DNA of 63,123 bases, filler included, from Reticulomyxa filosa (lineage: Eukaryota; Protista; Foraminifera): assembly GCA_000512085.1 (NCBI GenBank). It is 19 parts of 19 records of this genome, joined end to end, with 100 filler letters (N's around TTAATTAATTAA, not from the genome) between each part and the next. Parts side by side here need not be neighbours in the genome. Positions count along the whole stretch, not along the records: positions 22,346 to 28,274 come from ASPP01010005.1; 18 more parts are not named here. One strand, given 5' to 3'. Numbering within the stretch: position 1 is the stretch's first letter; each line of letters opens with the position of its first letter. A program made the position numbers and the translations under genes. Shown here in pieces: positions 22,493 through 26,854 of this stretch. The notes beneath the pieces were generated by a model that did no database searches, was not told the origin of the DNA, and saw nothing but the letters and a program-made list of their open reading frames with translations.

Positions 22493-25400
22493 ACCTATAT
22501 CCAAACGTTCAAATTTGTACACATGGATTACGTGTGGACGCGACTGTCGCAGACGTTGACGATCACAGTAACACTGGACGCGATCATCCAAGATAACACA
22601 GATATGAAAAGCGCGTGGGAGCAGTACAAAAAAATGATTGGCTATGTCCGTGGCATTCCTGAAAAGTTTTTTTTTTTAAAATCTTTATTCACATCATTGC
22701 ATATATGAATATATATGCAATGATGTGAATATAAATGATCCAACACTTATAGAATGGGCATAAGCGGCAACGACGACAAATTAAACGACTTCCAACACCA
22801 AATGATGGAATTGGAAAACAGTATTTTGAAAGGTACGATCTACGAACGATGCATCCAACAGAAATTTGGAGTGATAAGCAAAGTGCCGTACCACTTGGCC
22901 AAAACCTACGAGGCGTTTCAAAAGCAGAGCCAAACGGACAAAGAAGAGGCGCTAAAGCAGGAAAAAAAACTTGCACAAGAAATGGAAAAGGTCACCGTCA
23001 ACCGTGCCTTGTACGAAGAAGTGCTGCATCACTTGCGATACACGAAAACGAGAATCCGAAACGAGTTGGAAAAACAAAAGGAGTTCCATCATCGCGACGC
23101 TATTGTCGATATGTTTGCTTTGTACGGTTTGGTCAATTTTGTCTTCAAACACGTTTCGCATCAAGATAAAGTGTTTTACAAAGAATGTTTGGAGTATTCA
23201 AAAAAAGTTGGGTTCATATTTGTTGTTATTTAATTATATATATATATATATATATATGTATACATATATGTATATGAATATATTATTGATATCGTGAATA
23301 TACATCTAACTTTATAATAGGGTACCCTTAGTTCATTTGACAGGACGTGCTACGTGGTATCTGTCCGACTTTGTACAAAAGTTTATCCCTTACATTGGAA
23401 AAGAGAAAGAACTAGATCCGCAACCTTCCAAGATCATTGAATTCCGCAGAGGCTTTTTGCAAGCATTTGATGATCAATTCAATGAGTTTTGTCTTTTTTT
23501 TTTCCCCACTCACATATACAAATATGTTTATGCATATGTATGTATGTATTTATGTATGAATCATAGCTATGTTCAACATTTGTATATTAAAATGTGCGAA
23601 TGGATGATTCAATGGGATACTGATACTTCAGTTTTGTTTTATTATTATTGTTATTATTATTATTATTATTATTTAACTCAAAACAATACATACATAAATA
23701 TGCAATATATAAATGTAAATATATATATATATATACATTTATGTAACAAAAAATAGAGCGAAAAAGATATAATGGTAACATTGCGGAAAGAAACGCACTT
23801 GTTGATCGACGGCCTGGTATTGGCATCGCAAATCCAAAACACACTGACCACGCAGCTGTTTTTGCATTTGAACTTGGAAGTGAACTTCCGACAGGGGAAC
23901 TTACGCAGCTTGAGTGTGTGCGGAGAGTTGTTGAAATCCATCGAAGGAGCGTTTCATCGCAAAGCAAAGCGATTGTCTGCGAATGTTTCGTACATGTTGA
24001 CCGTCATTGCATTTTCCTTACAAAAGACATTCGACACGTATAAAAAAAAAATTGCACAAGTGCAAAGGCCTTCCACTGTTGAAGTTTGGATTTTTTTATT
24101 TTTTTTTATTTTTTTTAAAAAAAAAAAAAAAAAAAGATTTATTGTATATGCAATATATACATATACTATACATATACATTATATATATAATATATATATA
24201 TGTATATGTATGTATATGTATATATTGCATATACAATAAATCAATAATGTAGATGGATTGTCTCGCAGCCTTAGGATTATGTTCGAAGCTGCTAAACACG
24301 GCGCCAACGTTGTCGCGATTAGTGGTGCTGAACATTTCGTCGTGCATTTGCGCGATGAGTAATATAATGCGTGACGACGTGGACAAGGTGAAGTACACAT
24401 TATGGAAGTTAGACACGGTTGCGAATTGGCAGCATTATTTGCGGAAAGTGACAGATTGCAGTGTGTTCTATTGGGCGCTGAGTTTCATTCCCAACGTGTT
24501 GCGGGACATCTTTGACACGCCAGACAACGCCTATCGCTTGCCGGCCGTGTTCGGCTATTTGAACGACTCGGTTCCCATGCTGAAGCAAAATGCGCACGAG
24601 GAGGATCCGGAACATGTGTTCCAGGTATATTCCGAAGATGTGCTTGGCTACTTGGACAAAGAGATCATCAACGAGCTTTGCAATGCGATCGAAAATGACT
24701 TGCGATTGCAAGTGATGAACATGATCAACGAGAGACATGCATTTGCGTCCAAAAGTGGAGGTCGGACCAGCACGGCGGCGAACATGAATGACTTTTTGCG
24801 AATCCAAAGGAGCGGCAGTGTCATCGACACCACGGCCTCCATTGCTCCTTCGTCCAACAACACGCCTCGTGGCAATACGTCGTCGTCGTCGTCGTCGTCG
24901 TCGTCGGCGTCGAACTTGCCCAATGCCAACAGCGCCAACAAAGGTGGCATCACTGGGGTCGTCGGTACAGAGTACTATCAGTCGAGAAAAGACTATGGCA
25001 AATTCATTTTGTTAAAGCCGTTCCGCGTTTTGAATGAGCTCGTCGATATCAAAAAAAGAGTCGAGCATTATCTCAATAAGACATTTTACAACATGGCTAC
25101 TGTTGTTACGTATAAAAAAAAAAAAGCATTGGAATATATCATATACATATATATATATAAATATATATATATGTATATGATATATTCCAATGGTTTTTTC
25201 ATTTGTTTGTTTGTTTAGGCATTACACCAATGGGAAGTGTATGCGGAAATGAAAAGTCTAGCCAAGAAAAAATACGGACTGGACTTGGTGGAAACCCATT
25301 TGCCCACACAATCGCACTTCAGCGAGGGCCTGGACGTGCTGGAGGTGATGCGGAACATTCACTTGTTTGTATCGCGTTACAACTACAATTTGAACATGCA

Positions 25401-26854
25401 AATCTTTGTGGAACGTGCATTCGACCAGTTGCATCTCAATGCCTTTGACGTTGCCCACGTCGCCAACTCCATTCGAACCCATGGCCCTGGTATCGTGTCC
25501 ACCGCCGTCAACTTTGCCTACCAGTTTTGCGCGTCCAAGTTCGTCCTGTTCCACGAGTTTCTGTACGATGACCACATCAAGTCCCAACTCATTCGCGACG
25601 TTCGTCTGTTTCGAGACAAGAAGCAAGAGTGGAACAATCGCTATCCTTTTGTGCAGGCCAAACAATTTGTTGCTATGATTCGAACCTTTGGTGAAGATGG
25701 CAAAGGACAAACCTTCTTGGACCACTTTCGAGCACTAATTACACAAATCGGTAATGCCTTGGGCTATGTCCGCATGATCCGCTCTGGATTGTTGTATTAC
25801 ACTAGCTCTTCCATGGAATACGTACCCGATGTTGATGATGTCCCCGCTTTTGCTGATCATGTCAAAGAAGCTAGTTTATCCTCAGAAACAGCCCAAGCTT
25901 CGGAGTTTGCTTACTTATCTTTCTTTTTCCAAACCCAAAAAAAAAAAACAGCATTGGATTGCTATTAAAACAAAACTTTTTTTTTTTTTGGAACCCCTCC
26001 CCCCCTCTTCCAAAAAAAAAAAAGGAACTTGGATAATATTTTAAAAACAATGTCGAATTCGTTCGCAGAAGGTGCTGATTATCTGCAAATGCTAGTCATC
26101 GCGTTTGAAAAATTGCTTGCGACTGCAGATCAAACACATCTGCGTAATTTTGTTGCAATCAGTTATATTGCCTTTTTTTCCCCCCCCCCCTCTCCCTTCT
26201 TCTCCTCTACACTTCCTTCCAATCTTTTTATTCATGCAAATTCATGTGTGTGGTTTTTGACTGATTGATATACACAACCATGCACAACTTATTTTTTAAA
26301 AAAAAAAACATTGTAGTGCCGCCTTTGACGTATAATTTTGTGGAATCTCAAATTGGAAAGAAAGATCGCTTGGGTCGAAAGCCTGGAAAAGATGAGGCAG
26401 GATTCACAGACGACGGGTTCGCCTTGGGATGTGCTTTCATTTTGAGAGTGCTAAATTTGTACGACGAGTTCGATGCTTTGCATTGGTGGGATGAGGTCAT
26501 GGAACAAATGGCTAAACAAGATCAACAACAACAACCTTCTGGAAAAGCAGAAAAAAGTCGGCAAGAAAACGACGGAATAGGAACTTGGGAAGGCGATTTG
26601 TCCTTTAAACGAAACAAATTACAGAAAACGGAATGGAAATTGTTATTTTACTCGTTTCAAGCCGCTCGAATTTTCTTTCGCAATGTTTTGTCACCATCTT
26701 GTTTATTGTCCTTTTTTTTTTTTCCTTCTTCTCTGGGGGCACCCGAAACAATTCAGTCATAATGTGTTTTTTATTTTAATGTTTACAAAAATAACTAAAG
26801 GCTGACGTGAAAAAAGCAGAACAACCCGAAAGTGATAAAAAAAGTGATCAGTAA
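22493..26854 (+). CDS. WASHC4: WASH complex subunit 4 (SWIP/KIAA1033), 5' partial. Introns: 22666-22752, 23207/23212-23320, 23486-23566, 23631-23756, 24084-24252, 25105-25218, 25905-26024, 26162-26316, 26685-26800.
   Basis: Conserved blocks IENDLRL, VEHYLNKTFYNMATVALHQW, QSHFSEGLDVLEVMRNIHLFVSRYNYNLNMQIFVE, ANSIRTHGPGI, QIGNALGYVRMIRSG, FTDDGFALGCAFIL, ARIFFR. Confidence 0.95.

What the first reader, a model, noticed from the sequence alone, without database searches (positions are those of the whole stretch)
22666..26800. Deviant 5' splice-site consensus: introns overwhelmingly start GTT
Seen: all 9 WASHC4 introns, placed by reading frame and protein homology, begin GTT (GTTTTT, GTTGGG/GTTCAT, GTTTTG, GTTTTG, GTTTGG, GTTACG, GTTTGC, GTTATA, GTTTTG). 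Window-wide, about 26 of 34 hand-placed introns have T at +3 and none is GTRAG. Established: major-spliceosome donors usually have a purine at +3 and pair with the U1 5' end and the U6 ACAGA box. Inference: this lineage may have altered U1/U6 snRNAs or U1C/Luc7, or may recognise donors with little U1 pairing.
Basis: partly seen in the sequence, partly recalled or inferred. Interest (0 to 1): 0.85.

Follow-up and report, generated by a model that had tools for sequence, protein, structure and literature searches.

The report
GTT-type intron starts in a foraminiferan
Every intron that can be placed by homology on this Reticulomyxa filosa contig starts GTT instead of the usual GTA/GTG, a deviant splice-donor signal otherwise known only from Entamoeba, but whether the splicing RNAs changed to match could not be tested here.

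Summary
The piece is a whole 5,929-bp contig of the foraminiferan Reticulomyxa filosa. It carries most of a WASHC4 (SWIP) gene on the + strand and a coiled-coil/C2 gene on the - strand.

**Observation: confirmed.**
- A profile built from 40 full-length WASHC4 homologues places 8 introns. All are GT-AG and all start GTT.
- The junctions align to intron-free homologues without gaps, or with 1-2 residues of slack.
- The - strand gene has a ninth GTT intron, spanned by continuous coding sequence in three related contigs.
- A second R. filosa contig adds two more GTT donors, one in an unrelated kinase gene.

**Not explained by composition.**
- T is 43% of intron interiors (p = 5e-4 for 9 of 9).
- GTA, not GTT, is the commonest GT triplet inside the introns.
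- The same pipeline run on WASHC4 loci of other environmental eukaryotes gave T at +3 in 3 of 68 donors (Fisher 9e-9).
- The closest environmental relative (sister, 100/99 support) also uses GTT.

**Interpretation: only partly supported.** U1 and U6 could not be reached and no RNA reads were available. The closest known case is Entamoeba GUUUGU with a co-evolved U1. I rate this a new variant of a known kind.

The parts
22493..22665 (+). WASHC4 exon 1 on this contig. The gene's 5' part lies off the contig, and the 5' boundary (AG at 22491-22492) is tentative.
   Evidence: Pfam WASH-4_N positions 153-205; WASHC4 HMM 163-224
22666..22752 (+). Intron I1, 87 nt, GTTTTT...TATAG. It holds a 21-bp perfect hairpin.
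   Evidence: It has the only frame-compatible GT donor. Hairpin z = -7.2.
22753..23211 (+). WASHC4 exon 2
   Evidence: HMM 226-342
23212..23320 (+). Intron I2, 109 nt, GTTCAT...AATAG
   Evidence: Best GT-AG pair. A non-U12-like AT-AC pair scores 6 bits higher. The environmental loci L005, L007 and L080 have introns within 3 profile columns of it.
23321..23485 (+). WASHC4 exon 3
   Evidence: HMM 334-389
23486..23566 (+). Intron I3, 81 nt, GTTTTG...CATAG
   Evidence: Best pair by 14 bits; gap-free junction
23567..23630 (+). WASHC4 mini-exon 4 (64 nt)
   Evidence: The conserved LY..C.W motif aligns to homologues once the exons are joined.
23631..23756 (+). Intron I4, 126 nt, GTTTTG...AATAG
   Evidence: Best pair. 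The runner-up donor at 23636 is also GTT.
23757..24083 (+). WASHC4 exon 5
   Evidence: HMM 420-521
24084..24252 (+). Intron I5, 169 nt, GTTTGG...TGTAG. It holds a palindrome with 31-nt arms that are 100% complementary (24136-24242), plus a T-run/A-run stem.
   Evidence: Fold -68.8 kcal/mol, z = -13.9.
24253..25104 (+). WASHC4 exon 6. It includes a lineage-specific Ser-rich, low-complexity in-frame insert between about 24807 and 24979.
   Evidence: HMM 522-702 and 690-735. GC is 0.51-0.54 across the insert, which is exon-like.
25105..25218 (+). Intron I6, 114 nt, GTTACG...TTTAG. It holds a palindrome with 44-nt arms (25115-25204).
   Evidence: The junction FYNMATV|ALHQWEVYAEM is gap-free. Fold z = -11.6.
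25219..25904 (+). WASHC4 exon 7 (the most conserved exon)
   Evidence: Pfam WASH-7_mid E = 6e-89; HMM 732-959
25905..26024 (+). Intron I7, 120 nt, GTTTGC...AAAAG
   Evidence: Best pair by 19 bits, and only GTT donors are possible. Introns lie within 3 profile columns in L069 (GTAATA) and L074 (GTGCCT).
26025..26161 (+). WASHC4 exon 8
   Evidence: Pfam WASH-7_C; HMM 959-1004
26162..26316 (+). Intron I8, 155 nt, GTTATA...TGTAG
   Evidence: Best pair. The junction LRNFVAI|MPPLTYNF is gap-free.
26317..26684 (+). WASHC4 exon 9, reaching the end of the homology profile
   Evidence: HMM 997-1123 of 1125
26685..26800 (+). Probable intron I9, 116 nt, GTTTTG...CTAAAG (unverified). If it is spliced, a last exon at 26801-26854 encodes a 17-residue charged tail followed by a stop codon.
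   Evidence: The composition is T-rich. Homologues have short hydrophilic tails, whereas the read-through tail is hydrophobic. No homology covers this region.
27727..28218 (-). Exon 1 of the coiled-coil/C2 gene (RFI_13829), starting at the ATG at 28218
   Evidence: P0193 is 99% identical.
27670..27726 (-). Intron M1, 57 nt, GTTTTT...AAAAG (read on the - strand)
   Evidence: It contains an in-frame stop. The P0151-P0153 contigs read continuously across the junction with the same spacing. The paralogue on L089 has GTTTTT at the same site.
27217..27669 (-). Exon 2 of the C2-domain gene, including the stop codon
   Evidence: Pfam C2 E = 1e-25

Best explanation
These are ordinary short, AT-rich GT-AG spliceosomal introns of Reticulomyxa filosa. 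The lineage's 5' splice-site consensus has shifted from GURAGU to roughly A|GUU followed by a U-rich stretch, approximately GUUUUGU. U is invariant at +3, and A rather than G is the usual last exon base.

Shown here:
- the intron positions;
- the invariant +3 T, above compositional expectation;
- its presence in three unrelated genes on two contigs of this species;
- its presence in the closest environmental relative;
- its near absence from the same gene in other eukaryotes.

Inferred, not shown:
- Such donors can pair with a canonical U1 5' end at little more than +1 and +2. Recognition must therefore rest on something else.
- The options are a U1 5' end that co-evolved as in Entamoeba, U at +3/+4 pairing with the U6 ACAGA box, or U-rich-tract binding proteins of the TIA-1/Nam8 type recruiting U1.
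- I consider a modified U1 plus help from the U-rich tract the most likely combination.
For: - Organism: P0001 is ETO23353.1 of R. filosa, on a contig of 5,929 bp.
- Gene: Pfam WASH-4_N, WASH-7_mid and WASH-7_C hits lie in order on the exon reading frames.
- Introns: the profile-guided search puts a GTT donor top among GT-AG pairs at all 8 junctions. Junction alignments are gap-free or within 1-2 residues.
- Ninth intron in the - strand gene.
- Second contig L089: GTTTTT in the paralogue and GTTTAG (or GTTGCT) in a kinase gene.
- Statistics: intronic T is 0.43, giving p = 5e-4. GTT is 30% of intronic GT triplets. Fisher 8/8 against 3/68 gives 9e-9.
- AT-rich control: L069 (GC 0.26) uses GTA in 4 of 5 donors.
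- Relative: L005 is sister to R. filosa at 100/99 support, with GTTGAG and GTTACA donors.
- Shared positions: six of the eight intron positions lie within 3 profile columns of introns in other eukaryotes. All of those start GTA or GTG except the sister's own GTT intron at I2.
- Precedent: Entamoeba GUUUGU(U) with a U1 reading AACAAAC.
Against:
- The sample is only 11 verified donors, of which two are paralogous copies of one intron. One more donor is unverified.
- Positions +4 to +9 are also T-rich (30-80% per position). Part of the +3 signal may therefore reflect a general U tract, and under that null p is only about 0.01-0.02.
- Positions +4 to +6 vary, so there is no single sequence for a modified U1 to match.
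- No U1 or U6 sequence was seen.
- For I2 an AT-AC pair scores slightly higher than the chosen GT-AG pair.
Confidence: 0.78

Rival explanations
1. The pattern is a by-product of composition. The introns are T-rich, and especially U-rich just after the GU, so T at +3 reflects a U tract rather than a position-specific requirement.
For: Intron interiors are 43% T. Positions +4, +5, +7, +8 and +9 are 60-80% T. Several donors run straight into T homopolymers (I1, M1 and the L089 paralogue).
Against: - +3 is T in 10 of 10 donors, against 30-80% at the neighbouring positions.
- GTA is the commonest GT triplet inside the introns, 17 against 10 for GTT.
- The AT-rich control locus L069 uses GTA in 4 of 5 donors.
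- Even under a 67% T null, p is about 0.01-0.02.
Confidence: 0.1
2. The pattern is a peculiarity of this locus or of a few genes, not a property of the lineage.
For: Only two R. filosa contigs and three genes were seen.
Against: An unrelated kinase gene on a different contig also has a GTT donor. The sister environmental genome L005 uses GTT.
Confidence: 0.07
3. The introns are misplaced. The true boundaries lie elsewhere, or these are coding inserts as in the public model ETO23353.1, which reads through most of them.
For: The public annotation reads through, or places differently, 7 of the 8 introns. There are no RNA reads.
Against: - The read-through peptides are low-complexity and have no counterpart in any homologue.
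- The profile score is highest for the boundaries given here.
- Junctions align without gaps or within 1-2 residues.
- Several introns carry in-frame stops or change the frame.
- GC drops from about 0.45-0.54 in exons to 0.12-0.35 in introns.
Confidence: 0.03
4. The segments are removed by a route other than the major spliceosome: U12-type splicing, or structure-guided excision like the non-conventional introns of euglenids.
For: Three introns are almost entirely perfect hairpins.
Against: - All 9 verified introns have GT-AG ends.
- None has the U12 donor motif (A/G)TATCC.
- The hairpins are internal and do not pair the two intron ends.
- Most introns have no significant structure, with z between -2.4 and +0.8.
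Confidence: 0.02

Closest known systems
Entamoeba 5' splice site GUUUGU(U) with a co-evolved U1 snRNA (5'-AACAAAC-3'); Roy and Bowser, bioRxiv 10.1101/2022.06.08.495308, citing Davis et al. 2007
   Same: U replaces the purine at +3 and usually at +4. U is preferred at +7. The introns are short and AT-rich and end in TAG. A canonical U1 cannot pair beyond +2.
   Different: - Entamoeba is intron-poor and very strict, with 88-90% of donors exactly GUUUGU. R. filosa is intron-dense here (at least 8 introns in about 3.3 kb of coding sequence) and loose after +3: G at +5 in only 2 of 10 donors and U at +6 in 3 of 10.
- The two lie in different supergroups (Amoebozoa and Rhizaria), so the similarity would be convergent.
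- A modified U1 has been shown for Entamoeba but not here.
GUAUGU-type donors of intron-poor lineages (Saccharomycotina, Giardia, Trichomonas), which keep a canonical U1
   Same: The preferred donor does not match the canonical U1 5' end. This shows a lineage can run a deviant consensus without changing U1.
   Different: Those lineages deviate at +4 only and keep A at +3. They are also intron-poor with rigid signals.
Mastigamoeba balamuthi GUGCGC donors with U1 ACGUAC (same preprint)
   Same: It is an intron-rich protist with a deviant donor and a compensating U1 change.
   Different: The deviation is different: G at +3 and C at +4.
U12-type (minor) introns
   Same: Their donors are pyrimidine-rich after the first three bases.
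   Different: The minor donor motif (A/G)TATCCTT is absent from all introns here. Published work also found no minor-spliceosome snRNAs in Rhizaria (PMC11347168).

Membership tests
U2-type GT-AG spliceosomal intron | GT at the 5' end and AG at the 3' end | tested here: met
   9 of 9 verified introns, and the probable tenth
U2-type GT-AG spliceosomal intron | Removal restores a continuous reading frame colinear with homologues | tested here: met
   The spliced frame has no internal stops, and junctions align gap-free or within 1-2 residues. M1 is spanned by P0151-P0153.
U2-type GT-AG spliceosomal intron | Absent from the mature mRNA of this organism | not testable with these tools
No R. filosa transcript-derived protein appeared in the exon 7 search.
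Canonical major-type donor (GTRAGT) | Purine at +3 | tested here: not met
   0 of 10 donors on this contig and 0 of 2 on L089
Entamoeba-type donor (GUUUGU) | U at +3 and +4, G at +5, U at +6 | tested here: inconclusive
   +3 U in 10 of 10, +4 U in 7 of 10, +5 G in 2 of 10 and +6 U in 3 of 10. It resembles the Entamoeba donor at +3/+4 only.
Entamoeba-type donor (GUUUGU) | U1 snRNA 5' end complementary to the deviant donor | not testable with these tools
   No snRNA lies on the contig, and the rest of the genome cannot be reached by DNA search.
U12-type intron | Donor motif (A/G)TATCCTT | tested here: not met
   None of the donors matches it.
WASHC4 / SWIP (WASH complex subunit 4) | WASH-4_N, WASH-7_mid and WASH-7_C domains in order | tested here: met
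   Pfam hits on successive exon reading frames, above the gathering score on all but exon 3 (20.9 against 25 bits). There are 992 homologues with E <= 0.001.

The most novel reading that the evidence does not exclude
The Reticulomyxa lineage, and perhaps Foraminifera more widely, has re-tuned 5' splice-site recognition. Its U1 snRNA 5' end would have co-evolved to read GUU(U). That would be a second, independent case after Archamoebae, and the first in an intron-rich lineage. Ancestral introns would have been converted in place from GUR to GUU.
Probability: 0.35. Interest if true: 0.8.

Novelty: new variant of a known kind. Interest (0 to 1): 0.6.

Why it matters
U at +3 of the splice donor is very rare. 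In the literature I could search, Entamoeba is the only lineage described with it, and there it comes with a compensating U1 change in an intron-poor parasite.

An intron-dense, free-living rhizarian with an invariant +3 U and an otherwise loose donor would break the usual link between deviant donors and intron loss. It would also give a second system for testing whether snRNAs and splice sites co-evolve.

There is a practical consequence too. The public R. filosa gene models read through or misplace these introns. ETO23353.1 does so at 7 of 8 introns here. The published figure of about 2 introns per gene, and many protein sequences used in phylogenomics, are therefore probably wrong.

Tried and rejected

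- Rfam on the contig gave no snRNA. It gave only sub-threshold matches of AT-rich microRNA families to the intronic palindromes on both strands, plus one sub-threshold snoU49 match.

**Searches that found nothing close**
- A metagenome scan with exon 7 alone found no relative.
- The second scan gave 80 loci, none closer than 56% identity. I used them as a control panel.
- Exon 7 in the 90%-cluster database gave no R. filosa transcript-derived protein.
- P0144 looked as if it spanned a junction, but its N-terminus is unrelated.
- L006 (TARA) shows adjoining frame changes rather than clear introns and was set aside.

**Readings rejected**
- U12-type introns were rejected on the donor motif.
- The Ser-rich insert in exon 6 was offered as an intron (GTCATC) by the automated run. 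I rejected that because the segment is in frame, has no stops and has exon-like GC.

**Literature**
- The R. filosa genome paper (Curr Biol 2014) is not held in the library.
- No held paper describes the R. filosa or foraminiferal donor consensus or their U1.

- The first MAFFT run timed out.
- The spliced WASHC4 protein was never sent to any database, family or structure search. All such searches were done exon by exon, by reference. A joined translation was built only inside local scripts, for alignment with fetched homologues and for the tree.
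Full report
**Identity of the piece.** Positions 22346-28274 are one complete contig of 5,929 bp from the foraminiferan Reticulomyxa filosa. The best protein match (P0001, 100% identical) is ETO23353.1, 'hypothetical protein RFI_13827, partial', recorded on a contig of exactly 5,929 bp. Successive + strand reading frames hit Pfam WASH-4_N, WASH-7_mid and WASH-7_C in order, so the gene is WASHC4/SWIP. Its first roughly 160 residues lie off the contig. The - strand carries a coiled-coil/C2-domain gene, RFI_13829.

- I built an HMM from 40 full-length WASHC4 homologues, leaving out the window's own protein.
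- Nine reading-frame segments match it colinearly, and their profile coordinates abut: 163-224, 226-342, 334-389, 389-408, 420-521, 522-735, 732-959, 959-1004 and 997-1123 of 1125.
- For each of the 8 gaps I enumerated every GT-AG, GC-AG and AT-AC pair that keeps the frame and adds no stop codon. I then scored the joined local peptide against the profile.
- The best GT-AG solutions are I1 22666-22752 GTTTTT, I2 23212-23320 GTTCAT, I3 23486-23566 GTTTTG, I4 23631-23756 GTTTTG, I5 24084-24252 GTTTGG, I6 25105-25218 GTTACG, I7 25905-26024 GTTTGC and I8 26162-26316 GTTATA.
- At I1 and I7 only GTT donors are possible. At I4, I5 and I6 the runner-up GT donor is also GTT.
- At I2 an AT-AC pair with no resemblance to the U12 motif scores 6 bits higher. 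I kept the GT-AG solution because the other junctions are all GT-AG. This is a caveat.
- With these boundaries the reading frame is open throughout. Most junctions align gap-free to an uninterrupted homologue (P0002, a single reading frame on L001) and to a transcriptome-derived protein of the foraminiferan Nonionella stella (P0003). I1 and I2 have 1-2 extra residues nearby, and I4 borders a variable-length region.
- The joined protein was built only inside local scripts. It was not sent to any database, family or structure search. Those searches were done exon by exon, by reference.

**The ninth WASHC4 intron.** It lies beyond the end of the profile, so homology cannot confirm it. Splicing it gives a 17-residue charged tail like the short hydrophilic tails of homologues. 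Read-through gives a hydrophobic tail encoded by a pyrimidine tract. I rate it probable, not verified.

**More donors from the same species.**
- The - strand gene is broken by an in-frame stop between its two exons.
- Three JGI contigs that encode 71-78% identical proteins (P0151-P0153 on L002-L004) read continuously across that point. Their spacing is exactly what intron M1 predicts (27726 down to 27670, 57 nt, GTTTTT...AAAAG).
- The public model RFI_13829 uses the same GTT donor but an earlier acceptor. That adds ten residues which no homologue has.
- A paralogue on a second R. filosa contig (L089, ASPP01008011.1) has GTTTTT at the same site.
- An unrelated protein-kinase gene on L089 has an intron that starts GTTTAG, as implied by the annotated gene range and product length, or GTTGCT six bases upstream.
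- The tally is 11 verified donors (two of them paralogous copies of one intron) plus one probable donor. All are GTT and none is GTRAG.

**Is it more than composition?**
- Intron interiors are 43% T, which gives p = 5e-4 for 9 of 9.
- Among GT triplets inside the introns, GTA (17) outnumbers GTT (10).
- Drawing a random valid GT-AG pair per junction gives 1.5e-2.
- Positions +4 to +9 are also T-rich: 7, 6, 3, 8, 6 and 7 of 10. The harshest null is therefore a local U tract, under which p is about 0.01-0.02. That figure is my own arithmetic from those counts.
- The last exon base is A in 7 of 10 donors. Acceptors are TAG in 7 of 10 and AAG in 3 of 10.

**A control in the same gene.**
- I ran an automated version of the pipeline on 80 WASHC4 loci fetched from metagenomes and on the ENA contigs L005-L008.
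- Leaving out R. filosa, L005 and L022, it gave 68 distinct donors with G 35, A 20, C 10 and T 3 at +3.
- Fisher's exact test of 8/8 against 3/68 gives 9e-9.
- The AT-rich locus L069 (GC 0.26) uses GTA in 4 of 5 donors, so low GC alone does not produce GTT.
- On the R. filosa contig the automated run recovered 6 of the 8 introns as GTT. It also offered one false 'intron' (GTCATC) inside the Ser-rich insert of exon 6. That segment is in frame, has no stops and has exon-like GC.

**Relatives.**
- In a maximum-likelihood tree of the exon 7 region, the environmental contig L005 (ENA ERZ893790, GC 0.23) is sister to R. filosa with 100/99 support.
- Its two well-defined introns start GTTGAG and GTTACA. 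The first lies at the same profile position as I2. A third junction is ambiguous.
- Another contig, L022, has three clear GTT introns (GTTTGG, GTTTTA, GTTTGT) but does not group with R. filosa. Its organism is unknown.
- Six of the eight R. filosa intron positions lie within 3 profile columns of introns in other eukaryotes. All of those start GTA or GTG except the sister's own GTT intron at I2.
- This suggests that old introns had their donors converted rather than new GTT introns being inserted. The match is approximate, because intron phase was not compared.

**Mechanism (inferred).**
- From established knowledge of U1:5' splice-site pairing, a canonical U1 5' end (ACUUAC) can pair with these donors at little more than +1 and +2.
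- The one described parallel is Entamoeba. There 88-90% of donors are GUUUGU, U is preferred at +7, and the U1 candidate reads AACAAAC, fully complementary to the donor. The same authors note that U at +3/+4 also improves pairing with the U6 ACAGA box.
- Lineages with GUAUGU donors kept a canonical U1, so a U1 change is not a necessary consequence.
- R. filosa differs from Entamoeba in being intron-dense and in having a loose donor after +3. That fits a contribution from the U-rich tract, for example through TIA-1/Nam8-type proteins, at least as well as strict RNA pairing.
- None of this could be tested.

**Prior knowledge.** Searches of the held literature found no description of the donor consensus or U1 of R. 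filosa or other Foraminifera. Papers on foraminiferal genes call their introns 'canonical' on the basis of GT-AG ends only. The genome paper is not held, so prior mention there cannot be excluded.

**Verdict.** I classify it as a new variant of a known kind: an Entamoeba-like +3 U donor, convergent, in an intron-rich rhizarian.

Noticed in passing
window 22681-22736, 24136-24242, 25115-25204: Three introns (I1, I5, I6) consist largely of near-perfect palindromes centred on TA repeats. Arms are 26, 31 and 44 nt at 92-100% complementarity, and fold z-scores are -7.2, -13.9 and -11.6. They match AT-rich microRNA families on both strands below threshold. The three show no obvious sequence family. 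Without the hairpins the introns would be only about 20-40 nt long. Their origin (foldback insertions or TA-repeat expansion) and any role in splicing are unknown.
   Followed up: partly
window 22493-25965 (public model ETO23353.1) and 27670-27726 (RFI_13829): The public WASHC4 gene model gets only I1 right. It reads through or misplaces the other seven introns, using GTA or GTT donors inside the true introns. This produces low-complexity peptide stretches that no homologue has. The public C2-gene model uses an early acceptor that adds ten residues. The published R. filosa intron density of about 2 per gene is therefore probably an underestimate.
   Followed up: partly
L022 837-921, 1091-1170, 1641-1715: This JGI metagenome contig (Ga0302309_10066987, GC 0.49) carries a WASHC4 gene whose three clear introns all start GTT (GTTTGG, GTTTTA, GTTTGT). 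It does not group with R. filosa in the exon 7 tree. It may be another, unidentified lineage with GTT donors.
   Followed up: partly
L080, and L007 / L008 / L053: GC-rich environmental WASHC4 loci are densely split by 50-90 nt introns. Their donors are mostly GTGCG(C/T/G) (L080: 8 of 13), or GTG/GTC (L007). These resemble the GUGCGC donors reported for Mastigamoeba. The organisms are unknown.
   Followed up: no
window 26909-26972 (-): There is a sub-threshold match to the C/D-box snoRNA family snoU49 (31.3 bits against a gathering score of 35, E = 0.0025). It lies in the spacer between the two convergent genes. By eye I saw no convincing C and D boxes.
   Followed up: no
window 24807-24979: Exon 6 has a lineage-specific, in-frame, Ser-rich low-complexity insert containing a TCG repeat. 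Homologues lack it.
   Followed up: no
L002 and L003: These JGI contigs encode close homologues of the C2 gene and look like intron-free mRNA-derived sequence with untranslated ends. Each has one frame change. In L003 it falls at an A/K-rich run. These are probably sequencing or assembly errors.
   Followed up: no
L089 1-31 and window 22346-22492: Both R. filosa contigs begin inside TA-rich, intron-like sequence that ends in an AG just before coding sequence. The fragmented assembly seems to break preferentially inside introns.
   Followed up: no
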